From the IMG/VR virus record IMGVR_UViG_3300022921_000002, positions 62,001 through 126,000 of that record: a DNA stretch of 64,000 nt, one strand, 5' to 3'. Below the pieces are notes generated by a model that saw only the letters and a program-made list of their open reading frames with translations, was not told where the DNA came from and ran no database searches. The position numbers and the translations under genes were made by a program. Positions 22,410 through 56,949 of the stretch are shown here, piece after piece (the first letter of the stretch is position 1; every line of letters begins with the position of its first letter).

Positions 22410-22905
22410 GGTGTGTTACCAAAATACCTGCCTCTTTAAACATAGGCGCAGATTGCGTGGTCCATAAGTCAACCCATTTCTCGGGTGTGTTGTATGTTGC
22501 TTCGCGGATTACAACTCGGCGAATACCGGATTGAATAATAAGTTTAGTACAGTCAGGACACACTGGCAATCCGTGGACATATATTGTTGCATTCTTTAAT
22601 GAAACACCAGAATACAAAGCATTCATCAAAGCATTAGTTTCCGCATGGACAATCCGTGGGTATTTTTCATCTCGGTTTTCTAAACGCTCAATACTATCTT
22701 CAATACCTTTTGGAAAACCATTATAACCAGTAGCAAGAATACGTCGTTCGTCATTTACACAAACAGCACCAATCTGACTCGACGGATCTTTACTCCATTT
22801 AGAAATTGTTTCAGCCAATTCCATAAATCGCTTATCCCATTTGAGTTGACGTTCATCTTCCTCACGGTATTTTCGACTTATAAATCTATCATATGGTTCT
22901 TGCAT
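22402..22905 (-). CDS. cd: dCMP deaminase
   Basis: SKDPSSQIGA, GYNGFPKG, HAETNA, PVCPDC. Confidence 0.92.
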   Translation of the reverse strand: MQEPYDRFISRKYREEDERQLKWDKRFMELAETISKWSKDPSSQIGAVCVNDERRILATGYNGFPKGIEDSIERLENRDEKYPRIVHAETNALMNALYSGVSLKNATIYVHGLPVCPDCTKLIIQSGIRRVVIREATYNTPEKWVDLWTTQSAPMFKEAGILVTHLG

Positions 22906-24143
22906 TACATACCTCGAATAGCAATAGTTGAATTTAAACCACCAAACGCAAAGTTATTACTGATTGCAACATCAACCTTCTTTTCCTTTGCGGTATTTGG
23001 TACGACGTCAAGATCACATTCAGGATCAGGTTCTTCATAATTAATTGTTGGTGCAATAATGCCATCGTTTACTGCCATAATTGCCGCAAGTAATTCAACT
23101 GCACCTGTTCCGCCAATACAATGTCCGTGCATAGATTTGGTTGAACTTACACTCAATTTATGAGCATGGTCACCGAATGTTTGTTTGATAGCATCAATTT
23201 CAGTTCTATCATTTGGAACTGTGCCTGTACCATGAGCATTTATATAATCAACTTGTTCTGGGTTAATTGATGCATCTTTGAGGCATTTTTTCATTGATCT
23301 AATCAATCCTGAAACTTCAGGCATCACAAGATCACTTGAGTCTGCAGTACACGCCGCACCTAATACTTCACAGATGATATTTGCACCACGATTTTTAGCA
23401 TGCCAATATTCTTCAAAGACAAATACACCTGCGCCTTCACCGTGAACAATACCTTGACGCCCAAGAGAAAACGGTCGACAGTAACCTGGGCTTACAACGC
23501 GCAAACCTTCCCATGCTTTCATTCCTGATAGATTTAGAATTGCTTCTGAACCACCTGTCAGCATAACAGGAGCCATACCGTATTTAACCATATGGAATGC
23601 TTGTGTCATTGCGTGGTTAGCAGAAGCACATCCTGACGTTACAGTAAATGATGGACCTTTGATATTATGTTCCATTGAGATATGGCAAACAGGAGCATTA
23701 CCCATAACACGTGGAATAATAAAAGGATTAGCACGGCGTTTTGGATTATCAGATGCAAAGTAATTATGATATGTCCGTTCCCAGGTTTCAGCGCCACCAC
23801 TACCGTTACCCATAATAATACCTGCTTCCTCAGCAAGTTCACCATCAAATTCTAAACCTGATTGTTCTACTGCCTCGCGGGCTGCAAGTATATTGAGTTG
23901 TGTAAACCTATCAAAGATTGCAATTTGCATTCTTGTCCAATGGTCTTTTTCATCATAGCCTTTAATTTGGCCACCACGAGTGTAGCGCATATTTTGAATT
24001 TCTATGATGTTTTGGAGTTCGCTAATGCCGTCGGTGCCTTCGGCCATTGCTTTCATTGTATCTTGGGCAGTCCATCCTAAAGAATTTATAGTGCCCATGC
24101 CTGTAATAACAACACGGTTAGTCTGTCTTGTTGAGCTCATCAA
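22905..24143 (-). CDS. fabF: Beta-ketoacyl-ACP synthase II, FabF/NodE-like
   Basis: RVVITGMG; catalytic Cys in TSGCASANHA; His in INAHGTGT and KSMHGH; NNFAFGG; KAWEGLRV segment typical of NodE-like paralogues. Confidence 0.93.
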   Translation of the reverse strand: MMSSTRQTNRVVITGMGTINSLGWTAQDTMKAMAEGTDGISELQNIIEIQNMRYTRGGQIKGYDEKDHWTRMQIAIFDRFTQLNILAAREAVEQSGLEFDGELAEEAGIIMGNGSGGAETWERTYHNYFASDNPKRRANPFIIPRVMGNAPVCHISMEHNIKGPSFTVTSGCASANHAMTQAFHMVKYGMAPVMLTGGSEAILNLSGMKAWEGLRVVSPGYCRPFSLGRQGIVHGEGAGVFVFEEYWHAKNRGANIICEVLGAACTADSSDLVMPEVSGLIRSMKKCLKDASINPEQVDYINAHGTGTVPNDRTEIDAIKQTFGDHAHKLSVSSTKSMHGHCIGGTGAVELLAAIMAVNDGIIAPTINYEEPDPECDLDVVPNTAKEKKVDVAISNNFAFGGLNSTIAIRGM

Positions 24144-24810: not shown

Positions 24811-24818
24811 GGATATAT

Positions 24819-34538: not shown

Positions 34539-35130
34539 ATTTCATTCCATTATACATATCAATTGGTGCAGTGCCATTATAAGGATTGGCAATTGAGTTT
34601 ACTAATCCGTGTTCAAACGTATTAAATTCAATACCTTCATGGACAAGAAAACGATCTATACCTGCGTACTTTCTCATAAAGTAATCTTTATTTGACATAA
34701 AGTGATCCCAGATATGATTCTGTTCACCAGCAGTCCATGTGATTACTGAACTATTTATGTGAACATCATAAGCATGAGGTGCCATGTATAAATCGTCTTT
34801 CCAATAATCTTTAATGATTGTTAACCCATCCCAATTCAACCATGGGCGCGGATCAGCTTTAATATCCATGTCTAAATCAAAGAATAAACATTTACCTCTG
34901 ACTGGAAAATCTTTACTAAACATTGCAAGTTTATTCCACCAAAATCTAAGTGATGGTTTTTTGAAACATGGAATACACTCAATCTCAACATTCAACGGAT
35001 TATCAGTATAGCACAAGTATTGAGAATTAGGATAGTATTCTCGTAGCTGATCTCTCAATCTGTTAACGTGTTCAGGGTCGTACTTGTCACCATGTTTCAC
35101 AAATATAATATTATCGGTCATTAATTGCAT
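34513..35130 (-). CDS. GT8-like glycosyltransferase
   Basis: KHGDKY, WWNKL, FFDLD, INSSV. Confidence 0.75.
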   Translation of the reverse strand: MQLMTDNIIFVKHGDKYDPEHVNRLRDQLREYYPNSQYLCYTDNPLNVEIECIPCFKKPSLRFWWNKLAMFSKDFPVRGKCLFFDLDMDIKADPRPWLNWDGLTIIKDYWKDDLYMAPHAYDVHINSSVITWTAGEQNHIWDHFMSNKDYFMRKYAGIDRFLVHEGIEFNTFEHGLVNSIANPYNGTAPIDMYNGMKYELPRNTL

Positions 35131-36211
35131 TCCTCAATAAGTTCATAATTTTTGTAACTGCATTCCTGCTATTACGGTTAGACAGGTTTAATATTTTTAG
35201 TCTATTCATTATATCTTCTAATACATCTTTTGATAACAAATTAATATTCCAATTTTCAGTATGCTGCCGTCCTGCTCTATCATATGCATTTATAAACGCG
35301 CCAAAACCATTCCACTCCGCATATTTAAAAAACAAATCAATATTTTCGGCATTGACTTTCATAAGAGTTGAATTAACTTTAATGTTTTCAGGACCTAATA
35401 CATCTTTAAACTTTTGAATGTTATCCATTGTTTCATTATACTTACCGCCAATTCTAATCATATCATATTCCGATTCAACAACAGTATCTAATGAAACTGA
35501 AAGACTAATGTTGTTTTCTTGGCACATCCTTAAAACTTTTTTATTAAATACACTACCGTTAGTACAGATTTGTACTCTCATCTCAGGATTAATGTCGGCA
35601 ATCAACGCACAAAGTTTATATAATGCTTTATGAGAAAACGGTTCTCCACCAACAAATCTTATCTCTTTTAGGTGTGGAATAAACTCGACAAACTGTTCAA
35701 GCAATTGTTCTAGGTTTTCATCATTATCAAACACGTTTGGATCATATTGTTTAAGATCTTTATCGCGTCCTAACATATGTTTTGATGATAATTCGCCAAA
35801 GCACATTGGGCACGCCATATTACACAGATTACTAATTTCAAATTCAAAAACTCTAGGCCATGAGTTAGCATCCATTGCGTGTTCTAATCTATCTCTGCCA
35901 ACATTATAATCATATTCAATAATAGGTGGTGTTTCACCTTTATCAATTCTTTTTTGACAAGCAGCCTGACAACCTGCACTTAATTTATTCTCAAGGAAGT
36001 CATCTTTATAAGTGTTGTTTAATTCACCAAACCAATAATCTTTTAAACCAAACTGATCTTTTTTCCATATTTTCATTTTACGGCTAAAGCAGCAAGGATG
36101 CATCCCGCCGTTTCTTCTTATTCGCATATGATTAAATGCGGCATAGCATGAGATAATTTTATGTTCTTCGGGTATAGTTCGTTTACTTTGAAATAAATCC
36201 CACTTATTCAT
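35111..36211 (-). CDS. Radical SAM protein with N-terminal twitch/SPASM-like cluster
   Basis: CNMACPMC (CX3CX2C), GGEP; N-terminal C...PCC...C. Confidence 0.9.
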   Translation of the reverse strand: MNKWDLFQSKRTIPEEHKIISCYAAFNHMRIRRNGGMHPCCFSRKMKIWKKDQFGLKDYWFGELNNTYKDDFLENKLSAGCQAACQKRIDKGETPPIIEYDYNVGRDRLEHAMDANSWPRVFEFEISNLCNMACPMCFGELSSKHMLGRDKDLKQYDPNVFDNDENLEQLLEQFVEFIPHLKEIRFVGGEPFSHKALYKLCALIADINPEMRVQICTNGSVFNKKVLRMCQENNISLSVSLDTVVESEYDMIRIGGKYNETMDNIQKFKDVLGPENIKVNSTLMKVNAENIDLFFKYAEWNGFGAFINAYDRAGRQHTENWNINLLSKDVLEDIMNRLKILNLSNRNSRNAVTKIMNLLRNAINDR

Positions 36212-37415
36212 TATCTTTGTATTCCTTCAAATATGGAGCCAAATCCCATATGTCTTCATTATTTTCACGTGCCACTAAACAAAAGTCAATCCATTCAACC
36301 ATTCTTTCTTGTATCTCTGCCTTTTCGCCATTCCATTCTTCTTCTTGTGGTACAACACTTAATACGTTATTAGTATTACTCAAATCAAGTTTTGGGTTTC
36401 GCCAATAAAATTTATCGACTTGTTCAAATTTAGAATTAAGATATTCAAATAGTTTATCAATACCTTCTTTTTGGTGATGATCCTCTAACCAAACAGGTGA
36501 ACAATATTTTGGAAATGTAACAAGGTTTGCCATACTTACACGAGGCACACCAGGTACATCAATAAAGTAATCAATCAATTCTGGTAAGTGCATCCAATTA
36601 TAAATTGAGACCGTTGCAACAACTATTACGATGCGTCCTTCGACAGCGTGGTACCGATTGATATTATTTATTGTGCGTTCAAAGTTACCGCCACGGATCC
36701 AATCATATGTTTCGTGTACTCCATCAATACTTGCTTGAATGTGTACTTCTTCAATCTGATGTAAAATATCAATAACAGTATTAGTAACCAATTGAAAGTT
36801 AGTACAAATCTCAACACGGCATTTAGGATTTGTTTCCGCAACCTTTTTCAATATTTTTATATTGTTTGGGTCAGCAAATGGTTCACCACCTTTAATGGTT
36901 AGGTGCTGTAAATGTGGAACAAGATCAAGTACCTTATCAACATCGGCGTCAGTCATCTTATACATATCAGTGTGGAATTTATGATTTTGGTTTCGCCAAT
37001 CTAAACCAGACTCCACCGCCATTTTTTCATATGGTGCCCACTTTGACGAATACTTACCTGAACAGGTTACGCACATTTGGTTACAGATATTACTTGTTGT
37101 AAGCTCAAGAAACCTTATTGGTGTTACCTCAGCGGCAACGTCTTCTTCATATGTTGGAAATTTAAAACGGTTGTAAGTATCAAACCGAGCAAGGCGCCCT
37201 GCATCCCAATGGCGCCAACAGACATCACATTGAGGCGGGAATTTCTTTTCTTTAAAATCTGCACGGATTTGGTTGTATATATCACCGTTAAAGAACTCAG
37301 TTAAATCAGGAACATCTTTAATATGTGATACCGCAGTGTTATCACCGGCACAGCATAAGACAATTTCTCCAATAGGATTGATTGTCAATCCAGTTTCAGG
37401 TACCATACATTTCAT
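36204..37415 (-). CDS. Radical SAM protein with N-terminal twitch/SPASM-like cluster
   Basis: CNQMCVTC, GGEP; N-terminal C...LCC...CDVC. Confidence 0.9.
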   Translation of the reverse strand: MKCMVPETGLTINPIGEIVLCCAGDNTAVSHIKDVPDLTEFFNGDIYNQIRADFKEKKFPPQCDVCWRHWDAGRLARFDTYNRFKFPTYEEDVAAEVTPIRFLELTTSNICNQMCVTCSGKYSSKWAPYEKMAVESGLDWRNQNHKFHTDMYKMTDADVDKVLDLVPHLQHLTIKGGEPFADPNNIKILKKVAETNPKCRVEICTNFQLVTNTVIDILHQIEEVHIQASIDGVHETYDWIRGGNFERTINNINRYHAVEGRIVIVVATVSIYNWMHLPELIDYFIDVPGVPRVSMANLVTFPKYCSPVWLEDHHQKEGIDKLFEYLNSKFEQVDKFYWRNPKLDLSNTNNVLSVVPQEEEWNGEKAEIQERMVEWIDFCLVARENNEDIWDLAPYLKEYKDNE

Positions 37416-41066: not shown

Positions 41067-41438
41067 ATGGCTTATGTCAACGCCTTTGGAGTGGAGATGA
41101 AAACTATGGCAAAGAAAGAAATAACAGTTGATGCTGAAGCAGCAGCTGCACTCGACACAAATAATGACGGTCATATCTCGGCAGAAGAGCTGAGTATGGA
41201 GTTGGAATTTAAACGCAAGCGCCTTGAAGATCAAGATGCTCAACGAGATGCAATGCGTAAAATGACTTGGTTTGCATTGTTTGGAATGTTATTGTACCCA
41301 GTAGGTATTGCTATAACATCATGGTTAGGATTAGATGAAGCATCAGGATTAATTGGAGATATTGCACCGACATATTTTGTTGCAATTTCTGCACTTGTTT
41401 CTGTTTTCTTTGGTGCTAACGCATACAGTAGTAAGTAA
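41067..41438 (+). CDS. EF-hand plus 2-TM holin-like protein
   Basis: Canonical loop DTNNDGHISAEE; two TM helices; late promoter; second in-frame start at 41106. Confidence 0.6.
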   Translation: MAYVNAFGVEMKTMAKKEITVDAEAAAALDTNNDGHISAEELSMELEFKRKRLEDQDAQRDAMRKMTWFALFGMLLYPVGIAITSWLGLDEASGLIGDIAPTYFVAISALVSVFFGANAYSSK

Positions 41439-41567: not shown

Positions 41568-41634
<67 letters not shown>

Positions 41635-41644
<10 letters not shown>

Positions 41645-41802
41645 TTTCTTGTTATAAGATCAAGAACAATGCTCAACTCATATATTGATTTATCTAAAAC
41701 TAAATGAGCAGTTTTATCATCATTCTTTTTCTTTTCTTCGCGAAGAAACTCTAACCTTACCTTTATATAGTTTTCTGCTTCAGGTTTGTTTCCTCTACGC
41801 AT
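41635..41802 (-). CDS. Small hypothetical protein between tRNAs (55 aa)
   Basis: MRRGNKPEAENYIKVRLEFLREEKKK...; SD AAGGA; stop overlaps the tRNA-Pro 5' end. Confidence 0.5.
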
Positions 41803-41819
41803 AATATATCCTTTTTATT

Positions 41820-41893
41820 TGGCAAGGGTGGTAGGAATCGAACCCACACCAACGGGTTTGGAATCCGTTGTACTGCCATTATACTACACCCTA
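41820..41893 (-). tRNA. tRNA-Trp(CCA)
   Basis: Cloverleaf with TTCCAAA anticodon loop, GTGGG-TTCGATT-CCTAC T-arm, G discriminator and CCA; mismatches at pairs 1-72 and 31-39. Confidence 0.88.
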
Positions 41894-42283: not shown

Positions 42284-42312
42284 AATATAACTGATTCTAT
42301 AGTAAATGTCAA
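42284..42312 (-). promoter_or_regulatory. Early promoter with TAGAATCAGT spacer (copy 3)
   Basis: TTGACA-17-TATATT driving the ncRNA/tRNA block. Confidence 0.85.
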
Positions 42313-42315: not shown

Positions 42316-43026
42316 TTATTTGAAGTTTTTTTGTTTCCAAAACATTTTTTTGTACCGATCTACCCACATTGTTGCTAGTTTATTAACAAACTTTTTATGT
42401 GCGGATTGGTCTATATGATGTTGTTCAGATTTCCATGATTCTCTTTTAAAAGGAATAACTTGTACAAGTGGTGTTCCTTTTTTAATTATAACAGGTCGAC
42501 CTGTAAAGTTTCTAAAAAAGAATGGCAAGTTAACTTGATTGTTTTTATACTCATCGGTATCAACAATTGCTGTTTGGAAATAAACACCACTTAATTGTAA
42601 CGTAGGATCATTTAACATTGGTGTAAATAAACAACTATAACCTGGTGGTGTTTCAATTATAAAATGTTGATTGTATTTGAGTACCATTGCAGGTTCAGTG
42701 AAATACGGATGGCCGTTAACTTGATTAGTATTGTGGTCGGTAATTAAATTTTCCAAACCGTCATTTGACCATGAGGCTTCCCATTTGGGTTTATCATTTT
42801 CAATAGAACCGACAAGCATAAGATCACAGTGTGCAGTAATGGTATAACCTGCAGTCATTGCGTCAAGAAACGGAATACATTTTTTGACGGACCCAATTTG
42901 TACTCCTTCTATAACAGGAGATATCTTTTTAAACCAACTTGGTATTGTTTTGACTGCAGGTTTCGGATATTCACTTGCATCGGATAAAAACTCATCAACT
43001 GAAAATTTAATCCGTTTATCTTTCAT
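42316..43026 (-). CDS. Hypothetical protein, possibly dUTPase-like beta fold
   Basis: KKCIPFLDAMTAGY, IETPPGYSCLF, IKKGTPLVQVIPFKRE. Confidence 0.5.
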   Translation of the reverse strand: MKDKRIKFSVDEFLSDASEYPKPAVKTIPSWFKKISPVIEGVQIGSVKKCIPFLDAMTAGYTITAHCDLMLVGSIENDKPKWEASWSNDGLENLITDHNTNQVNGHPYFTEPAMVLKYNQHFIIETPPGYSCLFTPMLNDPTLQLSGVYFQTAIVDTDEYKNNQVNLPFFFRNFTGRPVIIKKGTPLVQVIPFKRESWKSEQHHIDQSAHKKFVNKLATMWVDRYKKMFWKQKNFK

Positions 43027-43039: not shown

Positions 43040-43504
43040 TTATTTTTTCATTTTAGCGGCTGCTTTATCAACTTCCTCTTGTGATACAACACCTTCAGAT
43101 AACAGACGTGCTCGGTTTGTGTTATGAGCTGCTTGTGTGTCATCTTTTGATCCACCTGTATATGGTACAGCATGACCTTCACTAATCATAATAGCAGTTA
43201 CCATACGACCATCTTCAGCAATAAAATCACCGAGGATACGACCAAACTTACCCTTCATATCTTCACCGTCTTTTGCAGCAAATGTTTTAAGTGTAGTTGT
43301 TTTGCCAAGGATGCCTTTTAGTCTATTCTTTGCGGCTAATCCAAATACCTTTTCAACCTTATCGGATGTGCGTGACTCAGGAGTATCAATACCCATAATA
43401 CGTACTCGCTCATCTTTCATCCAAATACCAAATCCTAGATCAATGTCTACATCCACTGTATCACCGTCCACGATTTTAGTTACGTGTGCTTTATATTCAT
43501 ACAT
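43040..43504 (-). CDS. Thermonuclease (SNase-like)
   Basis: IVDGDT, RVRIMGIDTPE, GKFGRIL. Confidence 0.88.
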   Translation of the reverse strand: MYEYKAHVTKIVDGDTVDVDIDLGFGIWMKDERVRIMGIDTPESRTSDKVEKVFGLAAKNRLKGILGKTTTLKTFAAKDGEDMKGKFGRILGDFIAEDGRMVTAIMISEGHAVPYTGGSKDDTQAAHNTNRARLLSEGVVSQEEVDKAAAKMKK

Positions 43505-43563: not shown

Positions 43564-43872
43564 TTATTTATTAAGTTCAAACCGTTCTTCGACGTGCTCA
43601 ATACAAGCAGCAATGATATGGCCGATAGTCGGTTCACTATCAATCCATAATCTAACCGCATAGTTATCAATATCAACGTCAGGAAAGAACTTCTCCTCAG
43701 CTGCCATGATGAAATATAGTACACCCATAGAATCCATAATATCATCAAGTGCTGATTCTAAAGTAATGTCATCACGTCTGTAGTCATCTTTCAAGTATTC
43801 AAGTGCCCAATCATACATTTGTTCAAGAGGTGGGCCGCCATATTTTGTAACCATATCCAATTCCTTATTCAT
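43564..43872 (-). CDS. Acyl carrier protein, NodF-like
   Basis: ITLESALDDIM-DS-MGVLYFIMAAEEKF keeps the ACP DS-x7-MAxEExF register; acidic, 102 aa. Confidence 0.7.
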   Translation of the reverse strand: MNKELDMVTKYGGPPLEQMYDWALEYLKDDYRRDDITLESALDDIMDSMGVLYFIMAAEEKFFPDVDIDNYAVRLWIDSEPTIGHIIAACIEHVEERFELNK

Positions 43873-43880
43873 CTGTATCT

Positions 43881-43909
43881 ACTATATCAAACTTTATTTA
43901 CTTTGTCAA
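43881..43909 (-). promoter_or_regulatory. Sigma70 promoter TTGACA-17-TATAGT for the ACP gene
   Basis: Consensus boxes immediately upstream of 43872. Confidence 0.65.
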
Positions 43910-43949: not shown

Positions 43950-44228
43950 ATGGATTTTTTAACGCTTGTTGGTGATGTAGGTTTCCCTATTGCTGGTGCC
44001 CTAGCTGCCGGTGTATTTGTATTTATCACACTTAAGTTTATCCTTGCAAGCGTTACTGACACTGTAAATTCCCTCAAAAATATTATGACGGGTTTGGACA
44101 ACCGAGTTCAGACTATGAATAACGATTTAGTGAAAATTGATGCCCTTTTAAGTTATGCTCTAAATGTTAAACCAAACATTGACCGCATAGCTGCAAATGA
44201 AGGCAAGGATGATGCAAGGAGAGATTAA
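43950..44228 (+). CDS. Small membrane protein (paralogue of 44588..44968)
   Basis: GDVGFPIAGA...LDNRVQTMNNDL. Confidence 0.7.
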   Translation: MDFLTLVGDVGFPIAGALAAGVFVFITLKFILASVTDTVNSLKNIMTGLDNRVQTMNNDLVKIDALLSYALNVKPNIDRIAANEGKDDARRD

Positions 44229-44587: not shown

Positions 44588-44968
44588 ATGGAATTTGACA
44601 TTGCAGGAGCCATAAGTGAATATGGATTTCCTATAGTTGCGGCTTTTGGAATGGGCTATTTTATATTTTTTATATGGAAATGGGTTACGGAAGTAATTGA
44701 TCCGGTCCTAGGTGAAGCGATGTTTACTTTGATTAAATTAGTAGATCGTGTACGTATGCTTGATAATGATATGATTAGACTTAATAGCAAGTTATCTATG
44801 GTACTTGAATATAGGTCAAAACTAAATCCTAAGCGACAAGATGAGTTGCATAGGTTGGTTGCCGAATATCAGGCAGGTAGTAAAGCGTTTAATTCAACTG
44901 GGGTTGTAGATGAAGAAAATATTAACAATAGTGGCGGTGATGATGCCGGCACAGGTAATAGCAAGTGA
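44588..44968 (+). CDS. Small membrane protein (paralogue of 43950..44228)
   Basis: SEYGFPIVAA...LVDRVRMLDNDM. Confidence 0.7.
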   Translation: MEFDIAGAISEYGFPIVAAFGMGYFIFFIWKWVTEVIDPVLGEAMFTLIKLVDRVRMLDNDMIRLNSKLSMVLEYRSKLNPKRQDELHRLVAEYQAGSKAFNSTGVVDEENINNSGGDDAGTGNSK

Positions 44969-45371
44969 ATTAGTTTGGGGATTTAAATCTCCCGCTTTTC
45001 ATTATGGTAATGGATATTCAACTCACGTTTTGTCGGTTGAACAACTTTCTCACAACAGAAAACAAGATTATAAAGACGAGCAACAACGTATTGCCGATGA
45101 ACTTGAGCGAGAAGCAGAAAATACTACTTTAGCCAAATTCCTTCGCAACGTAGAGTCAAGAATTTACGCTACGTTATCCAAACAAATGGTTGATGCTATG
45201 TTTGCCGATTGTGGCGACAGTTGTTCCAACAGCGGTTCAACTGACCTTGAAGATAATACGATTGCTTGGTTAAGAGACCCGGTAACAGGTTCTATCACAT
45301 TAACGATTACCGAAGCAGATGGTAGTACTACTGAAATCACAATACCAGGTGCTGGGGAGTTTAATTTCTAA
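44910..45371 (+). CDS. csgF: Curli assembly protein CsgF-like
   Basis: Signal peptide then ELVWGFKSPAF...EQ (CsgF N-terminus); directly upstream of csgG. Confidence 0.75.
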   Translation: MKKILTIVAVMMPAQVIASELVWGFKSPAFHYGNGYSTHVLSVEQLSHNRKQDYKDEQQRIADELEREAENTTLAKFLRNVESRIYATLSKQMVDAMFADCGDSCSNSGSTDLEDNTIAWLRDPVTGSITLTITEADGSTTEITIPGAGEFNF

Positions 45372-46184
45372 ATGAGATTTTTACCCTTCATACTAATATT
45401 CTTTTTAAGTGCCTGCGCAACACCCGGAAGTTTGAAAGTTTTAGGTGACCTTGATAAATCTCCAACATTATCAGGAAGTCCTATTGATGATAGATTACTC
45501 GCCGTTCCTGAACTGTCAGGTCCAAAGATTACAATTGCAGTTTATGAATTTGCCGATAAGACAGGTCAAAGAAAGACGAGTTCCAACTCATCATTATCAA
45601 GTGCCGTAACTCAAGGTGCTGAGGTTTGGGTAATTAAAGCATTACAAGATGTGGGCAATCAAACATGGTTTGAGGTAGTTGAAAGAGTTGGCATTGATAA
45701 TCTAATTAAAGAAAGACAGCTTATTCGCCAAACGCGTGAAGTATATGAAAAAGAAAAAGAAAAAGGCCCGACACCTTTACAGCCAATGTTATTTGCCGGC
45801 TTATTACTTGAAGGTGGTGTTGTAGGTTATGACTCCGATACCGCGGCCGGTGGAGTAGGTGCAAGATTCCTAGGAGTCGGAGCCTCAACAGAATATAGAG
45901 TTGATACAGTAACAGTTGTTATGAGACTTGTGAGTGTTAATTCAGGAAAGGTGTTAATGAGTATCGCAACTGAGAAATCAATTGCAAGTTACAGATCTTC
46001 AACCGATGTATTTAAATTTATTGATTTAGGACAAGAAAATATTGAGGTTGAAAATGGGTATTCCGTAAATGAACCTGTGAACTATGCAGTAAGGGCTGCA
46101 ATAGAACAGGGTGTGATAGAATTGGTTAAAGACGGGGTCGATAAGGGATTATGGTCGTATAAAATAAAAGAGATAAGAGGATAG
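45372..46184 (+). CDS. csgG: Curli secretion channel CsgG
   Basis: Lipobox FLSAC, IAVYEFADKTGQRK, AVTQGA, WFEVVER, EGGVVGYD, EPVNYAVRAAIE. Confidence 0.93.
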   Translation: MRFLPFILIFFLSACATPGSLKVLGDLDKSPTLSGSPIDDRLLAVPELSGPKITIAVYEFADKTGQRKTSSNSSLSSAVTQGAEVWVIKALQDVGNQTWFEVVERVGIDNLIKERQLIRQTREVYEKEKEKGPTPLQPMLFAGLLLEGGVVGYDSDTAAGGVGARFLGVGASTEYRVDTVTVVMRLVSVNSGKVLMSIATEKSIASYRSSTDVFKFIDLGQENIEVENGYSVNEPVNYAVRAAIEQGVIELVKDGVDKGLWSYKIKEIRG

Positions 46185-46186
46185 AA

Positions 46187-46924
46187 ATGAAGCATTTCAT
46201 ATTTTTGATTATGATGATGTTTGGTTCTGCAGCCTATGCCAACGATATCTACATTACACAAAGCGGTGACAATTTAGATTTAGACATAACACAAGATGGG
46301 CAAGATAACGAATTCGGTGATAGTACCACTGATGCAACTTTGACGGGTGATACAATGACTTTTAATATCACCCAAACAGGTGATTTTAACAAGATTGACG
46401 TTATCATTGATGGTAACAACTACACAGGTACTTGGGCATTTACAGGTGACGATAACACTGTTGATATGACTTGTGATTCCGCATCAGGTTTGAATTGTGA
46501 AACAGTTCAGGTTGATGTTACTGTTATAGGTGATGATTCTGACTTTAAGATTTACATTGGTGAAACAGCAGATGCCGATAGTTTAGTTGCTGACTTTACT
46601 GTTACAGGTGATGGTAACGCATTTTATCTTGATGCTGATGGCACAAATCAGAATTTTGATGTTAATGTTAATTCAAGCGCAACATTACTTACAGCAGGTA
46701 CAGATCGTACACATTTAACTTACGATGTTAATGCTGATAGTGCCGGTAACTTGATTGCTATTGACAGCACAGGAGATGGTGATGTTAATGGGCATGAAGT
46801 AGATCTTACAGTTACTGGTGGCGGCGGAGATTTTATTATTGTTCAAAGCGGTATTTACGATAATCTCGTAAACGCAACTTTCAGTGGAGATTCAGCAAAT
46901 GTTCAAATTACACAATCTGATTAA
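46187..46924 (+). CDS. Curlin-repeat-like secreted protein
   Basis: Signal peptide; NDIYITQSGDNLDLDITQDGQDN and repeated xQ/TxGDxN units; very acidic. Confidence 0.7.
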   Translation: MKHFIFLIMMMFGSAAYANDIYITQSGDNLDLDITQDGQDNEFGDSTTDATLTGDTMTFNITQTGDFNKIDVIIDGNNYTGTWAFTGDDNTVDMTCDSASGLNCETVQVDVTVIGDDSDFKIYIGETADADSLVADFTVTGDGNAFYLDADGTNQNFDVNVNSSATLLTAGTDRTHLTYDVNADSAGNLIAIDSTGDGDVNGHEVDLTVTGGGGDFIIVQSGIYDNLVNATFSGDSANVQITQSD

Positions 46925-48069
46925 TGAAATTTCATACTATTGGCTTCATTGCCATTCTGCTGATACCGAGCTTATGCTTTGGCGCTGTAGATGAAGATGC
47001 GGGGGCAATCGGTGAATTTTCAGGATCAGGAGTCATTGAGCGTGGGAGAGATGTTATTGATGGTGGCCAAGGTGTTGGGGTGCAACCCATGGATACCGCC
47101 GTCACAGCAAAAGGCCGAATGCGAATCGACTTTATTGATGATACGAGAGTCGATATTACCGAACACGCAAGGTTAGTAATTGATGATTTCGTTTATGACC
47201 CAAATGCTGGGACTGGTAAGCTGGGATTACGTGCGACATTGGGAACAGTACGCTATGCGTCTGGAGCAATTGCAAAGAACAGCAGAAGAAACGTCAGCAT
47301 CAAAACACCGTCAGCAACGATAGGTGTACGTGGTACTGATTTCGTTATGGTGGTTGATGAAATAGGTGGCACGATGGTGACATTATTACCATCGTGTTCC
47401 ATCGACTCCCTCGGAAAAACCAATTGCGTGACCGGTGAAATTTCAGTTGAGTCTGACACCGGGTTTGTTATTATGAATAAAGCATTTCAGGCAACAATAG
47501 TAAAAAGCAGATGGACAAAACCAACTAAGCCATTATTATTGGCGCTTAATGAAAGTGACATAACAAACCTTTTGATTTTAAGAAAGAAAAAACCTTTATT
47601 TGAAGAAGATGGGCAACCATTAGAACAAATGACGGATTTCCTAGATATAGATTTCTTAAATTTTGACGGTTTGGATGTTGATATTTTATCCGATAGTATT
47701 AAAGACATATGGTTAACAGAGTTTGATTTAAGAGATAGTGATTATTATCTCGGTGAACTACTACACGACATGGTTGAACAATTAAACATTGCTTTAATGC
47801 GAAGACTTATGGGTGAATTAGATGCACAGAATGCCGAGTTCTTTAATTTCAGAGAAGAAGGTTATGATCCTGTAACAAGAATTACTTTAAACAGAGAAGA
47901 TCCTAGTTGGATTTTTGAAAGAGACGATAGTGGTTATTATCACCACCTAAGAATATATGTGGAGCAGCAATATGGATATACGATTAATATCCAACAACAG
48001 GACGAGTATGTTTGGGATTACCGTCTTGGCGTTGGTAATAATAATATTGACATCATCCAAATCAAATAG
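46924..48069 (+). CDS. FecR-domain protein
   Basis: Signal/TM segment, DDTRVDITEHARLVID, GTVRYASG, IKTPSATIGVRGTDF. Confidence 0.88.
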   Translation: MKFHTIGFIAILLIPSLCFGAVDEDAGAIGEFSGSGVIERGRDVIDGGQGVGVQPMDTAVTAKGRMRIDFIDDTRVDITEHARLVIDDFVYDPNAGTGKLGLRATLGTVRYASGAIAKNSRRNVSIKTPSATIGVRGTDFVMVVDEIGGTMVTLLPSCSIDSLGKTNCVTGEISVESDTGFVIMNKAFQATIVKSRWTKPTKPLLLALNESDITNLLILRKKKPLFEEDGQPLEQMTDFLDIDFLNFDGLDVDILSDSIKDIWLTEFDLRDSDYYLGELLHDMVEQLNIALMRRLMGELDAQNAEFFNFREEGYDPVTRITLNREDPSWIFERDDSGYYHHLRIYVEQQYGYTINIQQQDEYVWDYRLGVGNNNIDIIQIK

Positions 48070-48850
48070 TGGACCAAATGAAGTTTATATGTATCAAACA
48101 GGTGACGACTTTACGTTAACTATCACCCAAGATGGCAGTCAGAATTATATAACTGGTGTAAGTGGACAGACTAAAGGTATTGAAGGTGACAACAATACGG
48201 TTGATATGGTACAAATAGGACAGTATCATGGTATCGCAGGAATGTTAGATGGTGATAACAATAACATAGATTTTTATCAAGGTGGCGGTGGTGACAGCGG
48301 AATGATTACTGCAATGGTAACAGGTAATAATAATGACCTGGTGGTGTGGCAAGGTAAGCATCCTGATGGTACAACTGACTTGTCAGAAGGCGGTGACCAC
48401 ACTGCAACGGTTACCATTACTGGTGATTATAATGATATTAAGGCCGGACAAACTGATCAAGGACAAATTAATCAAACTTATGGTAGGCATGAATTAACCG
48501 CAGAAATTACCGGTGATAGCAATGATGTTGGAATGACACAAAAAGGAAATCAAAAGCATACATTGGACCTTGATATTTCTGGTGATGGTAATGATGTTAC
48601 AACTTATCAGCATGGTAATGGCGGACAAAAAACTGCAACCATTGAAGTTTCTGGCAACTATAACGTAATTGATGTAAACCAACGTGGAACAAATTCAGCG
48701 TCAGCAACCATTTCAGTAGAAAGCATATATGGTCCTGCCTATAATGTAACACTTAGCCAACAAACCGACACTTCTGCTAAATCATTTTCTTTAAGTGGTG
48801 TATGTAATGATCCAAATGGATGTGTCGTAAGTGTCGAGCAACACAACTAG
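47957..48850 (+). CDS. Second curlin-repeat-like secreted protein
   Basis: More than eight Q-x-G-x-x-N / GDxN repeats; true start probably 47975 or 48008. Confidence 0.7.
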   Translation: MWSSNMDIRLISNNRTSMFGITVLALVIIILTSSKSNSGPNEVYMYQTGDDFTLTITQDGSQNYITGVSGQTKGIEGDNNTVDMVQIGQYHGIAGMLDGDNNNIDFYQGGGGDSGMITAMVTGNNNDLVVWQGKHPDGTTDLSEGGDHTATVTITGDYNDIKAGQTDQGQINQTYGRHELTAEITGDSNDVGMTQKGNQKHTLDLDISGDGNDVTTYQHGNGGQKTATIEVSGNYNVIDVNQRGTNSASATISVESIYGPAYNVTLSQQTDTSAKSFSLSGVCNDPNGCVVSVEQHN

Positions 48851-53300: not shown

Positions 53301-53423
53301 ATGATAGGTCAAGAGAGATTTTGTAAAAAGTGTGGTCACCGCTGCCACTGTTATGCATCAGACTGTAAAGAATGTGTCAATGATGTTTGCACAAGCTGTG
53401 ATTGTAAGAAAGATAAAGAATGA
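53301..53423 (+). CDS. Cys-rich metallothionein-like peptide (40 aa, 9 Cys, 2 His)
   Basis: MIGQERFCKKCGHRCHCYASDCKECVNDVCTSCDCKKDKE; SD AAGGAG; ATGA overlap with the cyclase. Confidence 0.7.
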   Translation: MIGQERFCKKCGHRCHCYASDCKECVNDVCTSCDCKKDKE

Positions 53424-55462
53424 AAAATATTTTATTATCTCCTATATGGAGCATATTATTGTTAGGGTTACTTGCTTGGCTGCATACTATTAATCCTTCA
53501 TTCATTGAAAGTTTAAGATTACGGTATTTTGACCAGCTTATTGTAAATCAAGAGGTTGTCCCAAATAACATTTATTCAGTAAACATTGATGAAGATGCAA
53601 TAACCGAATATGGACAATGGCCATTTCCTAGACAAGTATACTCAGAATTTATTATAGATCTGTACAATAGAGGTGCAGGTCTTGTTGTTTTAAATATTCT
53701 TATGTCTGAACCTGATAGATCCGGCGGAGATGAAGACCTTGCTATAACTATGCAGCAAGTACCAATAATTTTAACCATGCTTGGAGCTGAGGAGAACAAA
53801 AATGAAGCGATTAATCCAGGAGCCTCTATTATTAATAGCGATTATATTTCTCTCATTCCAAGTGTACCTGGGATTATCGCTAACATCAATGAGCTTGAAA
53901 CTAATGCAGTGGGGTCAGGAATCATCAACACATTCCCAGAGATCGACGGGGTTACCCGCAGAGCACCGTTGGTATTCGAGTCCGGGGGGAACCTCTTCCC
54001 TAATGTCACCCTTGAGGTATTGCGAGTCCTTGCCGGAGACCCATCCTTCCAAATCAAGTTGTCGCCGCTCGGGGTTGATAAATTAAGAATACCACAATTT
54101 GGAATGATACCAACAAATGAGGTTGGCGAGGTATGGATAGATTGGTCTCAAGGTTATCAATCAGAATCAATAATGAATTTGCCAGATGATTTAGGAGGTG
54201 CTGTAGTATTTGTTGGACCAACAGCTGCAGGTACTATTCAACCGATTTCAACTGCGGTTGGTGGAGTATATCCACAAGAAATACAAGCAGCAATGCTTGG
54301 TACTGTATTTAATGAGTCAAACATCACACGTCACGCCGATGCAAAAGCATGGGGTGAACTGGCTGCTCTAATTGTAGCAGGGCTATTAATAATTGGTTTA
54401 TCCTATTGGACTTTTATAGGCATCGGCGCATTCGTATTAACGATTGGCGGCTTTATAGGAGGGTCTATCTATGTATTCCAAAGTTCAAATTTACTTATTG
54501 ACGGCATCACTATTTCTGTTATGCTGTTCCTTGTTGGTAGTTTACGATATATTGTAAAATTCGTAGACGAGTTTTTACAGAAACAAGCAATCAAAAAACA
54601 ATTCGCGGGTTACGCTTCACCAACGGTTGTTAAGTTATTACAAGAAAATCCGTCGTTAGTTAAGGATGGGCAAAAGAAAGACGTATCAATAGTATTCAGT
54701 GACCTTCGCGGTTTTACTCCTTTAGGAGAAAGCTTTGGCGATGATGTTAAAGGCTTAACGGAGATTATGAATGGTTATATGGATGCAATAACCGAACCAG
54801 TATTAGATGCCAATGGCATGATTATTAAGTATATCGGCGATGCTTCAATGCATATTCACAACGCACCGATAGATGATCCTGACCACCCACGAACCGCGGT
54901 GCAAGTGGCTTTCAAAATGCTGAAAGCAGTGGAGAAATTTAATGTGGCACTTCAAAGAAGTAACCGGCCGCCAGTGGGCATGGGTGCTGGTATTAATTCT
55001 GGCCTGGGTTACATTGGGGAGATGGGTAGTAGTAAGCGGCACAGCTACGACATACTTGGGGATGCTGTATCAACAGCAGCAAGAATTGAGTCTAAATGTA
55101 AAGAATATGGAATGGTACTCCTCATTGGAGAAGAAACGCAACGCCACACAGCTGATGAATTCTTTTACCTCAAGATCGACGACTTGGCAGTCAAAGGTAA
55201 ATCGGTAGGAATTGGAATTTGGACAGCACTTGATGATGTAAAACAACCATGGTATGCAGCACAGAAAAAACACCAAGAAATGTTTGCTGCGTATCAAGCA
55301 CAAGATTTTGATAAAGCTATTGAACTATGTGATATATTACATGGCCACTTTGATAATAAAATGGACGGATATTATGATATGTGGAAAGAAAGATGTGAAT
55401 ATATGAAAACACAAGACCTTCCAGAAGATTGGAACGGCGTATTTATTGCGACCACAAAATGA
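53420..55462 (+). CDS. CHASE2-domain class III adenylate cyclase
   Basis: CHASE2 (GQWPFPR, DGVTRR, YPQEIQA), three TM helices, cyclase motifs FSDLRGFT, KYIGDA, GINSG, GDAVSTAARIES. Confidence 0.92.
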   Translation: MKNILLSPIWSILLLGLLAWLHTINPSFIESLRLRYFDQLIVNQEVVPNNIYSVNIDEDAITEYGQWPFPRQVYSEFIIDLYNRGAGLVVLNILMSEPDRSGGDEDLAITMQQVPIILTMLGAEENKNEAINPGASIINSDYISLIPSVPGIIANINELETNAVGSGIINTFPEIDGVTRRAPLVFESGGNLFPNVTLEVLRVLAGDPSFQIKLSPLGVDKLRIPQFGMIPTNEVGEVWIDWSQGYQSESIMNLPDDLGGAVVFVGPTAAGTIQPISTAVGGVYPQEIQAAMLGTVFNESNITRHADAKAWGELAALIVAGLLIIGLSYWTFIGIGAFVLTIGGFIGGSIYVFQSSNLLIDGITISVMLFLVGSLRYIVKFVDEFLQKQAIKKQFAGYASPTVVKLLQENPSLVKDGQKKDVSIVFSDLRGFTPLGESFGDDVKGLTEIMNGYMDAITEPVLDANGMIIKYIGDASMHIHNAPIDDPDHPRTAVQVAFKMLKAVEKFNVALQRSNRPPVGMGAGINSGLGYIGEMGSSKRHSYDILGDAVSTAARIESKCKEYGMVLLIGEETQRHTADEFFYLKIDDLAVKGKSVGIGIWTALDDVKQPWYAAQKKHQEMFAAYQAQDFDKAIELCDILHGHFDNKMDGYYDMWKERCEYMKTQDLPEDWNGVFIATTK

Positions 55463-55764
55463 TTAGAACTTTATTTGAAATGTTCTTTAAAAATTATATT
55501 GATGAACAAATAGACAAACGGTTCACGGAGAATATGATTGAAAGATACTGGGCTCAAAGACAGAATGAAACATCAAGACGACTTCAACAAGCAAGAGATC
55601 GCTACAAGATTGATTATCCGCCTTCCCATGAGGCCGAGCAAGATATGTCCGAGCCCAAAGTATTGTCCAGTGGTGACTTACGATGGGACGACGCCAAATC
55701 CCGAGTACAAACAAAAACCACTACATCTTCGTTAAAAGATAAACTAAAGGGGATTAACAAATGA
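55429..55764 (+). CDS. Hypothetical protein
   Basis: ORF in the operon; true start probably MIRTLF. Confidence 0.5.
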   Translation: MERRIYCDHKMIRTLFEMFFKNYIDEQIDKRFTENMIERYWAQRQNETSRRLQQARDRYKIDYPPSHEAEQDMSEPKVLSSGDLRWDDAKSRVQTKTTTSSLKDKLKGINK

Positions 55765-56501
55765 TAGAAAAATGCGCAACTATGGCTCAGTGTGCTCAAA
55801 TAGCATATATGGACGGTAAAGAAGCAAAAGCTGAATATAAAAAGTTAGGTTATACACAACATAAATTTATTGAAAAGGATGGTGCTCAGGTACACCTTAT
55901 TCAGAATAAGAACGAAATTGTTTTATGTTTCCGTGGTACAGAGCCTGGTGAATTTTCTGATATTAAAGCAGATCTAAATGCTATGCCCGACAAAGCAAAC
56001 AACGGATCAGGTCTTGTCCATAACGGTTTTCAAACAGAAGTTGATAAAGTATGGGTTGCAATTGAAGCAGCATTGGCAAAGGCAAAACCTAAAGACCTAT
56101 TCATATGCGGACATTCATTAGGTGGTGCAATGGCAACAATTGCAACATCTCGTTTGGCTGATGGTCCTTGGAATCCTGTGGCATTATATACATATGGATC
56201 ACCGAGAGTTGGTACTCGTAAATTCGTCAAGAGTTTTAAAAATGTTACTCACTATCGCCATGTCAACAATAATGATTTGGTAACAACTGTACCGTTTGCA
56301 CTTATTGGCTATAGACATCATTGCCCACCACGTTATATTAATTACTACGGTAATATTAGAAAAATGTCGAAGTGGCAAAGAATTAAAGACAAGTGGCGCG
56401 GCCGTTGGAGAGCATTGAAAAAAGGTATGCCTTTTGATGGTGCATATGACCACGGTATGAACCATTACTGCAAATACACGGAGCAAAATAATGATAGATA
56501 G
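55761..56501 (+). CDS. Class 3 lipase
   Basis: FRGT, VHNGF, GHSLGGA, YGSPRVG, DLVTTVP, DHGM. Confidence 0.9.
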   Translation: MIEKCATMAQCAQIAYMDGKEAKAEYKKLGYTQHKFIEKDGAQVHLIQNKNEIVLCFRGTEPGEFSDIKADLNAMPDKANNGSGLVHNGFQTEVDKVWVAIEAALAKAKPKDLFICGHSLGGAMATIATSRLADGPWNPVALYTYGSPRVGTRKFVKSFKNVTHYRHVNNNDLVTTVPFALIGYRHHCPPRYINYYGNIRKMSKWQRIKDKWRGRWRALKKGMPFDGAYDHGMNHYCKYTEQNNDR

Positions 56502-56793
56502 AATGCTAGAAGACACGTTATGGATCTACACCGCAATTGGCGGATCCATAATTGGCGCAGTTGTACTTGCATATTTGAGTACAACACGCATTGGACTATG
56601 GGGCTATGCTAAATTTGATTTGATGATTGATTACTTAGTTGAGCGCTGGGGTTTAACCTGGCTTGAACAACCTGAAGACGCATGGCGAAAGAAGTATCCA
56701 AAAATCACTCAAAAGATTGATGATATGGAGCGCCGGCTAAATGCCGTTGAAGCAAAAGCTGGTGTTAAAATCCTAGGAGGAAAAAAGAAATGA
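56491..56793 (+). CDS. Membrane protein with coiled-coil tail
   Basis: N-terminal TM, WRKKYPKIT...ERRL. Confidence 0.6.
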   Translation: MIDRMLEDTLWIYTAIGGSIIGAVVLAYLSTTRIGLWGYAKFDLMIDYLVERWGLTWLEQPEDAWRKKYPKITQKIDDMERRLNAVEAKAGVKILGGKKK

Positions 56794-56948
56794 ATTGGAT
56801 TAAAAACAGACTTAAGGAAAGAACAACTTGGGACGGCTGTGCTTTGGTAGCACTCGGTATGTTGGTTCTCTTCATGGCACCATTAGCAAAAATTGCTGCA
56901 GGCATTGCAATTGCCTGGGGCGCTTGGACAATTTGGAAATCTGAATAA
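56790..56948 (+). CDS. Small 2-TM holin-like protein (52 aa)
   Basis: MNWIKNRLKERTTWDG + two TM helices; SD AGGAGG. Confidence 0.55.
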   Translation: MNWIKNRLKERTTWDGCALVALGMLVLFMAPLAKIAAGIAIAWGAWTIWKSE

Positions 56949-56949
56949 G

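What the first reader, a model, noticed from the sequence alone, without database searches (positions are those of the whole stretch)
43564..43909. NodF-like acyl carrier protein with its own promoter, a candidate partner for the FabF/NodE gene 20 kb away
Seen: a 102-aa acidic protein with DSMG at the phosphopantetheine Ser, the MAAEEKF helix in ACP register, and a C-terminal LW...TIGHII segment reminiscent of NodF (DSLG...AW...IGDVV as I recall it). It has a dedicated TTGACA-17-TATAGT promoter. Inference: a split NodE/NodF-like module. No phosphopantetheinyl transferase is in the window, so host AcpS would be needed.
Basis: partly seen in the sequence, partly recalled or inferred. Interest (0 to 1): 0.6.

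Follow-up and report, generated by a model that had tools for sequence, protein, structure and literature searches.

The report
Divergent phage acyl carrier protein homolog
A small acidic gene in an uncultured marine T4-like phage is a real but very divergent acyl-carrier-protein homolog with its own early-type promoter; it does not look like a dedicated partner of the phage's FabF-like ketosynthase, and phage ACP homologs of unknown role are already known.

Summary
One correction: translation most likely starts at Met7 (ATG at 43854), giving 96 aa, not 102.

The protein fails Pfam PP-binding. Other evidence places it in the ACP/PCP carrier superfamily:
- A profile comparison with true ACPs gives 95.5% probability, with Ser aligned on Ser.
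- Two clade relatives hit NCBIfam AcpP models (E down to 1e-6).
- An AlphaFold model (pLDDT 93) is a four-helix bundle whose nearest solved structures are almost all ACP/PCP chains (Z up to 9).
- Asp47-Ser48 is invariant and sits at the N-terminus of helix II.

The family is tiny: three clades, all in marine T4-like phage contigs. The whole 221-kb phage genome has no PPTase, so a host enzyme would have to modify the Ser.

The NodE/NodF-module idea is not supported. The ketosynthase is an intact FabF type. In a related phage that keeps the ACP-like gene, the ketosynthase is cleanly absent from an otherwise collinear neighbourhood. The genome also lacks FabD, FabG-like, FabA/Z, adenylation and MBOAT genes.

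The only constant neighbour is a downstream SNase nuclease gene, but that nuclease occurs widely without the ACP-like gene.

Verdict: an orphan, probably host-activated carrier protein with unknown cargo. It is a new member of a known kind.

The parts
43564..43854 (-). ACP-like carrier protein CDS, 96 aa from Met7 (the maximal ORF runs to 43872, 102 aa). The candidate phosphopantetheine site is Ser48 in ORF numbering, Ser42 from Met7.
   Evidence: ORF and translation. Start refinement. Homology to ACPs. Fold. dN/dS 0.13.
43862..43866 (-). Shine-Dalgarno-like AAGGA, 7 nt upstream of the Met7 ATG
   Evidence: Read from the sequence. Conserved in L001 and L010, whereas the upstream ATG is out of frame in L010.
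43881..43909 (-). Sigma-70-like promoter TTGACA-17-TATAGT with TG extension, of the early/host-RNAP type
   Evidence: Scan. Conservation of the hexamers with a diverged spacer. Genome-wide enrichment of such sites.
43040..43504 (-). SNase-family nuclease gene, 59 nt downstream on the same strand. It is the only neighbour conserved next to the ACP-like gene in all three clades.
   Evidence: Pfam SNase and phrog_452. Synteny.
42316..43026 (-). 236-aa protein of unknown function (phrog_7084), third gene of the apparent transcription unit
   Evidence: A second promoter-like site follows at 42312..42284, ahead of the tRNA genes.
22905..24143 (-). It is the only other FAS II component in the genome.
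   Evidence: Pfam and NCBIfam. Catalytic residues aligned to 1j3n. Absent at the syntenic site in G005.

Best explanation
The gene encodes a free-standing carrier protein of the ACP/PCP superfamily. It belongs to a very divergent lineage confined to a small group of uncultured marine T4-like myophages.

It is transcribed early by host RNA polymerase from its own sigma-70-type promoter, as the first gene of a short unit: ACP-like, SNase nuclease, a 236-aa protein of unknown function.

Inferred mechanism: a host phosphopantetheinyl transferase (AcpS or Sfp type) converts Ser48 to the holo form. The protein then carries acyl groups as thioesters and feeds host-type fatty-acid or lipid enzymes. 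In this phage lineage those enzymes may include the phage's own FabF-like ketosynthase, but the carrier is not a dedicated partner of it.

Shown here: homology, predicted fold, the conserved Asp-Ser, the promoter, purifying selection and the phyletic pattern.

Inferred only: the modification, the cargo and the partner enzymes.
For: Homology:
- The family profile against the PDB gives 85 hits at E<=1, nearly all ACPs; the best is 2ehs at E 0.002.
- hhalign against two PF00550 ACPs gives 95.5% probability, with Ser on Ser.
- Family members P0004 and P0005 hit NCBIfam AcpP models at E 1.2e-6 and 1.9e-4. They are linked to the window protein at E 4.6e-7 and at 1e-23 to 1e-31.

Fold:
- The AF2 model has pLDDT 92.9, with helix II starting exactly at the Ser.
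- The top 50 Foldseek PDB hits are all ACPs, TM 0.5-0.7.
- An exhaustive VIA-align search gives Z 9.0 to T. maritima ACP, and nearly all of the top 50 are carrier proteins.
- The nearest ESM Atlas clusters are all PF00550.
- A first model built without true ACPs in the alignment had the same helix order and the same ACP top hits, at low confidence.

Other support:
- D47 and S48 are invariant across clades that are only 32-38% identical.
- The protein is acidic, pI 4.2.
- The promoter and Shine-Dalgarno site are conserved.
- dN/dS is 0.13.
- The genome encodes an intact FabF-like ketosynthase and no adenylating loader.
- JGI pipelines already label relatives 'acyl carrier protein'.
Against: - P0001 has no PF00550 hit, and P0005 scores 12.6 bits against a 20.8-bit cut-off.
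- Two acidic helix-II positions that, from general knowledge of E. coli ACP, contact AcpS and FAS enzymes (D38, E41) are Gly50 and Tyr53 in this clade. Recognition by host AcpS and Fab enzymes is therefore uncertain.
- The genome has no PPTase, FabD, FabG-like or FabA/Z.
- The high-confidence model used an alignment that included two true ACPs, which may bias it.
Confidence: 0.55

Rival explanations
1. One reading: a dedicated NodF-like carrier that works specifically with the FabF/NodE-like ketosynthase at 22905-24143, as a split two-gene module making a special fatty acid.
For: Both genes are in the same genome and on the same strand. They are the only two FAS II-type components present. The ketosynthase is catalytically intact. 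In four near-identical viral contigs the two genes co-occur.
Against: They lie 20 kb apart, with many unrelated genes and promoters between them. In the related phage G005, which has the ACP-like gene, the ketosynthase neighbourhood is collinear but the ketosynthase is exactly missing between the homologs of 24321-24593 and 22402-22905; PF00109 finds nothing in that 56-kb contig. The ketosynthase scores best with FabF models, and no NodE-type signal was seen. No NodF-specific similarity was found. The contigs that do co-occur are the same phage species, so they are not independent.
Confidence: 0.1
2. A carrier for a phage-specific pathway other than fatty-acid elongation, for example acylation or other modification of envelope components. 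It would be served by still-unrecognised phage enzymes in the surrounding variable region.
For: The gene sits at the edge of a variable region rich in envelope and host-interaction genes: the curli CsgF/CsgG operon, a class 3 lipase, an epimerase/dehydratase, a 2OG-Fe oxygenase and twitch radical SAM enzymes. In the other clades it is translationally coupled to different upstream genes: an NAD-dependent epimerase/dehydratase in L039, and 442-aa plus 181-aa unknowns in L021/L022. Specialised type II ACPs and PCPs score as well structurally as FAS ACPs.
Against: No known loading enzyme is in the genome: AMP-binding and MBOAT are absent, and the only alpha-oxoamine synthase is a 5-aminolevulinate synthase. 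The upstream genes of the other clades are absent from this genome, so no partner is conserved.
Confidence: 0.2
3. Not a working carrier. Instead, an acidic ACP-fold protein that regulates or inhibits the adjacent SNase nuclease, or acts as a decoy that titrates host ACP-binding proteins.
For: The ACP-like gene is followed by the SNase gene at a constant 55-60 nt in all three clades, although the upstream genes differ. The protein is small and very acidic, as many nuclease inhibitors and DNA mimics are (the comparison is general knowledge).
Against: In the 80 best of more than 579 related SNase loci in viral contigs (59-76% identical), none has an ACP-like ORF within 2.5 kb, and the upstream neighbours are highly variable. 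In phage Melnitz the nuclease sits in the baseplate module without such a gene. So the nuclease does not need it. The invariant Asp-Ser at the helix II N-terminus is what a carrier needs, not what an inhibitor needs.
Confidence: 0.1

Closest known systems
Bacterial type II FAS acyl carrier protein (AcpP; PF00550, TIGR00517)
   Same: Collinear four-helix architecture. Asp-Ser at the N-terminus of helix II. A near-identical IMAAEE(K/E)F helix II core. Acidic pI. Comparable size: P0004 has 79 aa, the window protein 96.
   Different: It scores below every curated threshold. The loop before the Ser is 2 residues shorter, there is a 2-residue F/Y-P insert after helix II, and helix III is 4 residues longer with an invariant Arg-x-Trp-Ile. 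The helix II positions equivalent to D38 and E41 are Gly and Tyr. It has an N-terminal extension and lies in no fab operon.
Phage-encoded ACP homologs (for example in Erythrobacter phage vB_EliS-R6L, Vi01-like phages, phiCbK-like phages and flavobacterial jumbophages)
   Same: Free-standing carrier-domain proteins in phage genomes without a phage PPTase, with function stated as unclear (PMC5463345, PMC3220722, PMC13573597). They also appear as structural neighbours in the viral model library.
   Different: There is no detectable sequence relationship to them: no PHROG hit and no tblastn hit among 50,697 phage records. Those proteins are generally recognised by PF00550; this family is not.
NodF (rhizobial nodulation ACP), paired with NodE
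   Same: A specialised stand-alone ACP of about 90 aa that works with a FabF-like ketosynthase.
   Different: nodF and nodE are adjacent and co-transcribed. Here the two genes are 20 kb apart and the ketosynthase is dispensable in a relative. No NodF-specific match was found in the sequence or fold searches.
DltC / AlmF aminoacyl carrier proteins
   Same: DltC was the best single-sequence PDB hit, aligned over residues 18-77 with DS(F/M)G and the later Trp in register. It had the highest identity among the structural hits, 24%.
   Different: The E-value is only 0.42. The required partners are missing from the genome: adenylating ligase (AMP-binding) and MBOAT.

Membership tests
ACP/PCP carrier-protein superfamily (PF00550 PP-binding) | Match to the Pfam PP-binding model above the gathering score (20.8 bits) | tested here: not met
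   P0001, P0002 and P0003 give no hit at E<=10. P0005 scores 12.6 bits and its L021 variant 13.3 bits. A six-frame search of the genome with PF00550 finds nothing.
ACP/PCP carrier-protein superfamily (PF00550 PP-binding) | Statistically supported homology to bona fide carrier proteins | tested here: met
   hhalign of family profile A3 against two PF00550 ACPs: 95.5% probability, E 1.4e-8. Profile against the PDB: best E 0.002, and hits almost exclusively ACPs. P0004 against NCBIfam ACP NF002150: E 1.2e-6, nearly full length.
ACP/PCP carrier-protein superfamily (PF00550 PP-binding) | Four-helix bundle with a long loop between helices I and II | tested here: met
   Prediction only. AF2 gives pLDDT 92.9 with helices at 10-25, (36-39), 42-56, 64-73 and 77-95. 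VIA-align gives Z 9.0 / 3.5 A / 81 residues to 1vku, and the top 50 are almost all carrier proteins. Foldseek's top 50 are all ACPs. The alignment used included two true ACPs.
ACP/PCP carrier-protein superfamily (PF00550 PP-binding) | Conserved Ser in an Asp-Ser-hydrophobic motif at the N-terminus of helix II | tested here: met
   D47-S48-M49 is invariant D-S in all five or six family members. The Ser is the first residue of helix II in the model and aligns with the ACP Ser.
ACP/PCP carrier-protein superfamily (PF00550 PP-binding) | 4'-phosphopantetheinylation of that Ser | not testable with these tools
   This needs mass spectrometry. No PPTase (PF01648) is in the 221-kb genome, so a host enzyme would be required.
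AcpP of type II fatty acid synthesis (TIGR00517) | Score above the NCBIfam trusted cut-off (70.45 bits) | tested here: not met
   P0001's only hit is NF002150, at 11.9 bits and E 0.21. P0004 scores 24.6 bits and P0005 21.3 bits on TIGR00517.
AcpP of type II fatty acid synthesis (TIGR00517) | Acidic helix II recognition residues (E. coli D35, D38, E41, E47, E48) used by AcpS and Fab enzymes | tested here: inconclusive
   Alignment A5 shows the equivalents of D35, E47 and E48 kept. D38 is Gly50 and E41 is Tyr53 in the window clade; the P0005 clade keeps the Asp and has Asn at the E41 position. The role of these residues is from general knowledge.
AcpP of type II fatty acid synthesis (TIGR00517) | Genomic association with fab genes | tested here: not met
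   The only fab-type gene is a FabF-like ketosynthase 20 kb away. FabD, FabG-like and FabA/Z are absent.
NodF/NodE module | Carrier gene adjacent to and co-transcribed with its dedicated ketosynthase, and the two inherited together | tested here: not met
   The genes are 20 kb apart with separate promoters. The ketosynthase is precisely absent at the syntenic site in the ACP-like-bearing relative G005.
NodF/NodE module | Specific sequence or structural affinity to NodF rather than to ACPs in general | tested here: inconclusive
   No NodF entry is among the 60 best PDB profile hits or the 50 best structural hits. I could not confirm that a NodF chain is in the representative libraries.
DltC/AlmF aminoacyl carrier systems | Partner adenylating ligase (DltA/AlmE, AMP-binding) and transferase (DltB, MBOAT) | tested here: not met
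   PF00501 and PF03062 find nothing in the genome.

The most novel reading that the evidence does not exclude
The ACP-fold protein and the SNase nuclease form a functional pair that has stayed together through 60% sequence divergence. For example, the (acyl-)phosphopantetheinylated carrier could gate or target the early nuclease, coupling host DNA degradation to the lipid or CoA state of the infected cell. That would be a non-biosynthetic, regulatory use of a carrier protein in a phage, similar in principle to mitochondrial ACP-LYR signalling.
Probability: 0.07. Interest if true: 0.7.

Novelty: new member of a known kind. Interest (0 to 1): 0.3.

Why it matters
Phage genomes repeatedly carry stand-alone ACP homologs whose role is unknown (PMC5463345, PMC13573597).

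This one defines a very divergent lineage specific to marine T4-like phages. Standard domain models miss it. An exhaustive search of 1.84 billion representative proteins found only two relatives.

It sits in a phage that also carries a FabF-like ketosynthase, a class 3 lipase and other envelope-related auxiliary genes. If the Ser is modified by the host and loaded with acyl chains, that would give a handle on how such phages retune host lipid metabolism.

The practical value here is a corrected annotation: the start codon, the family assignment, and no dedicated ketosynthase pairing. As a discovery it is modest.

Tried and rejected
- **Complex prediction.** Ketosynthase plus ACP-like protein (residues 7-102): no answer, ipSAE 0.09 and 0.08, controls not run. 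This is not evidence either way.
- **Phage record searches.** megablast of 4 kb and tblastn of the protein against 50,697 phage records gave no match.
- **Family scans.** PHROGs gave nothing below E 0.1. Pfam gave only a chance-level DUF3541 match.
- **ESM Atlas by features.** The top clusters are unnamed; PP-binding clusters appear only at ranks 11 and 15, so this is a lead only.
- **First AF2 model.** With 4 sequences the model had pLDDT 59, and Foldseek E-values were >=1.2 although the hits were ACPs.
- **Metagenome contigs.** A ketosynthase search on metagenome contigs, including a 151-kb contig of the P0005 clade, was not possible because those records are not held.
- **Upstream genes of the P0005 clade.** The 442-aa and 181-aa genes have no Pfam family and no homolog in this genome.
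- **Melnitz.** The small ORF upstream of the Melnitz nuclease is unrelated to the family.
- **Alpha-oxoamine synthase.** I considered an acyl-ACP-using enzyme after a PF00155 hit, but it is a 5-aminolevulinate synthase.
- **Intergenic region.** The ACP-SNase spacer shows no conserved motif beyond an A/T-rich stretch and a Shine-Dalgarno site. Small, non-homologous hairpins occur in the other clades.

Full report
**What is there**

The window is bases 62001-126000 of a 221,447-bp IMG/VR virus record that CheckV rates as complete. It carries T4-type replication genes: the gp45 clamp and gp44 clamp loader. The nearest cultured relatives by gp44 share only 51-57% identity: Stenotrophomonas phage DLP6, Methylophilales phage Melnitz and cyanomyophages. 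It is therefore an uncultured marine T4-like myophage.

The flagged ORF is at 43564..43872 on the minus strand (102 aa).

The promoter TTGACA-17-TATAGT lies at 43909..43881 on the minus strand. It has a TG extension and is the best-scoring site in a 6-kb scan.

**Start codon and promoter**

The -10 hexamer ends 8 nt before the first ATG, which has no Shine-Dalgarno.

I aligned the upstream region with two related contigs:
- Both promoter hexamers are conserved while the spacer differs.
- In the 75%-identical relative (L010) the first ATG is out of frame.
- A conserved AAGGA precedes the second ATG (Met7, 43854) by 7 nt.

The relative's protein also begins at the position of Met7. I therefore take the product to be 96 aa.

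The promoter is not a special feature of this gene. The genome has 54 TTGACA-N16-18-TAnnnT sites against 16.1 +/- 4.5 in Markov simulations, including a repeated promoter family. This fits a T4-like early, host-RNAP class of promoters; that reading rests on general knowledge of T4.

The gene is real. dN/dS is 0.13 against L010, and the protein recurs on 97 contigs in its 92%-identical form.

**Is it an ACP?**

Curated models fail:
- No Pfam PP-binding hit.
- No PHROG hit.
- Only a chance-level NCBIfam ACP match at E 0.21, although it is in the right register.
- A six-frame PF00550 search of the genome is blank.

The family is tiny:
- An exhaustive phmmer search over 1.84 billion representatives found two relatives.
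- A profile word search added one more clade.
- Scans of viral and metagenome contigs found only these three clades.

The evidence for homology nevertheless converges:
- A profile of the family against all PDB sequences returns 85 hits at E<=1, almost all ACPs. The best is Aquifex ACP at E 0.002, with the Ser on the Ser.
- hhalign of the family profile against two genuine PF00550 ACPs gives 95.5% probability.
- The shorter relatives hit NCBIfam AcpP models on their own: P0004 at E 1.2e-6 over nearly its full length, and P0005 at E 1.9e-4.
- An eight-sequence alignment is collinear from helix I to helix IV. Its family-specific indels are a loop before the Ser that is shorter by 2 residues, an F/Y-Pro insert after helix II, and a helix III that is 4 residues longer and carries an invariant Arg-x-Trp-Ile.

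Asp47-Ser48 is invariant across clades that share only 32-38% identity.

**Fold**

The first AF2 model, from four family sequences, had pLDDT 59. It already showed the ACP helix order, and its top Foldseek hits were ACPs, though not significantly.

With the eight-sequence alignment the model reached pLDDT 92.9 and pTM 0.82, and helix II starts at the Ser. Its neighbours are:
- Foldseek against the PDB: the top 50 are all ACP chains, TM 0.5-0.7 and rmsd 2.5-3 A.
- An exhaustive VIA-align run over 48,161 chains: Z 9.0 to T. maritima ACP, and nearly all of the top 50 are ACP, PCP, ArCP or DltC carriers.
- ESM Atlas shape search: only PF00550 clusters.
- The viral model library: many phage 'acyl carrier' or 'carrier domain' proteins.

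Caveat: the second alignment contained two true ACPs, which can pull the model toward their fold. Z values of 8-9 are also middling for helical proteins. The weight rests on the agreement of the sequence and structure evidence.

**Partners and context**

The genome has none of the following:
- PPTase (PF01648)
- Adenylating loader (PF00501)
- MBOAT
- FabD, FabG-like SDR or FabA/Z

The only PF00155 enzyme is a 5-aminolevulinate synthase, at 559 bits against a 338.55-bit cut-off.

The gene at 22905-24143 is a FabF-like ketosynthase. TIGR03150 scores 410 bits, below its 494-bit cut-off. The protein is 42% like Thermus FabF, and the catalytic Cys, both His, the Lys and the gating Phe all align. 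A fabF gene has been noted before in freshwater pelagimyophages (PMC7029224).

The decisive test of the proposed module is phyletic. In G005, a 56-kb contig of the P0005 clade that carries the ACP-like gene, the ketosynthase neighbourhood is collinear gene for gene. It runs from the thymidylate-synthase-like gene through two small ORFs, the dCMP deaminase, a methyltransferase-like gene and the nucleotidyltransferase. The homolog of 24321-24593 is followed after 19 nt by the homolog of 22402-22905, with no ketosynthase between them. PF00109 finds nothing in that contig.

The ketosynthase is thus a lineage-specific indel, and the carrier gene exists without it at that site. The contig is only about 27% of a genome, so a ketosynthase elsewhere in it is not excluded.

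The contigs where the two genes do co-occur are near-identical copies of the same phage, so they are not independent.

**The constant neighbour**

In all three clades the ACP-like gene is followed after 55-60 nt by an SNase-family nuclease gene that is 67-72% identical. The upstream genes differ between clades:
- Window clade: its own promoter, facing a curli operon.
- P0005 clade: two unknown genes.
- P0004 clade: an overlapping NAD-dependent epimerase/dehydratase gene.

This raised the idea of a nuclease regulator. However, the nuclease is widespread: more than 579 related loci were found in viral contigs. In the best 80, none has an ACP-like ORF within 2.5 kb, and the upstream neighbours vary widely. 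In Melnitz the nuclease lies in the baseplate module.

The nuclease therefore does not need the carrier. The adjacency is most simply a two-gene block inherited vertically at the edge of a variable region.

**Conclusion**

The ACP call is supported at superfamily level, with the defining Ser in place.

The NodF/NodE reading is not supported. The most likely mechanism is a host-activated holo-carrier that plugs into host-type lipid metabolism, possibly but not exclusively with the phage FabF. Modification, cargo and partners remain inferences.

Phage ACP homologs of unclear function are already on record (PMC5463345, PMC3220722, PMC13573597). JGI pipelines already name two relatives 'acyl carrier protein'. 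I therefore rate this as a new, very divergent member of a known kind, of modest interest.

Noticed in passing
window 44910-48850 (+): A curli-type (type VIII secretion) cluster, divergent from the ACP-like gene: CsgF (44910-45371), CsgG lipoprotein (45372-46184), a curlin-repeat protein (46187-46924), a FecR-domain protein (46924-48069) and a further curlin-like ORF. It is conserved in all related contigs. Such clusters have been described in pelagimyophages and in the OM43 phage Melnitz (PMC7029224, PMC9004378).
   Followed up: partly
window 53420-55462 (+): A 680-aa protein with a CHASE2 sensor domain fused to an adenylate/guanylate cyclase catalytic domain. A phage-encoded membrane cyclase could manipulate host cyclic-nucleotide signalling or defence.
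   Followed up: no
window 55761-58573: A class 3 lipase (55761-56501, +) is 75% conserved in the P0005-clade phages. Beside it lie a 2OG-Fe(II) oxygenase (56950-57705, -) and an NAD-dependent epimerase/dehydratase (57689-58573, -). Together with the ketosynthase and the ACP-like gene, these give the region a lipid and envelope theme.
   Followed up: partly
G000:C1:172945-174141 (outside the window; L044:1366-2562): The phage encodes a full-length 5-aminolevulinate synthase (TIGR01821, 559 bits, over its cut-off). It lies directly after a ribonucleotide-reductase-like gene and before a DUF454 membrane protein. It would be a haem-pathway auxiliary gene of the C4 route (from general knowledge, the alphaproteobacterial one).
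   Followed up: partly
window 17476-25517 (-): A run of nucleotide- and sugar-metabolism genes: a thymidylate-synthase-like gene (24819-25517), dCMP deaminase (22402-22905), a methyltransferase-like gene (21729-22409, phrog_799), a sugar-1-phosphate nucleotidyltransferase with a kinase-like C-terminus (20300-21775), a HAD phosphatase (19966-20328), a 420-aa unknown and a C5-cytosine-methylase-like gene (17476-18699). This looks like a DNA base-hypermodification cluster. The FabF-like ketosynthase is inserted into it in this lineage only.
   Followed up: partly
window 35111-37415 (-): Two adjacent twitch-domain radical SAM proteins (NF033640: 209 bits, over its cut-off, and 150 bits). They are conserved in the related clade, with further unknown genes on either side.
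   Followed up: no
genome-wide, e.g. window 42312-42284 (-), 27340, 28205 and 60114 (-): A repeated sigma-70-like promoter family, TTGACATTTGGTTTAGAATCAGTTATATT and close variants, with at least 10 copies. It suggests a shared early-promoter cassette.
   Followed up: partly
window 43950-44228 and 44588-44968 (+): Two paralogous small membrane proteins (both phrog_18771) open the operon that leads into the curli genes.
   Followed up: no
window 43040-43504 (-) and loci L045-L124: The SNase-family nuclease is extremely widespread in marine viral contigs: more than 579 loci at about 59-76% identity, with highly variable neighbours, as expected of a mobile or frequently relocated gene.
   Followed up: yes
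window 41067-41438 (+), 41568-41893 (-): An EF-hand-containing membrane protein is conserved across the clades. Next to it lie tRNA-Pro(TGG) and tRNA-Trp(CCA), driven by a second consensus promoter and followed by a strong terminator-like hairpin at 41476-41445.
   Followed up: no
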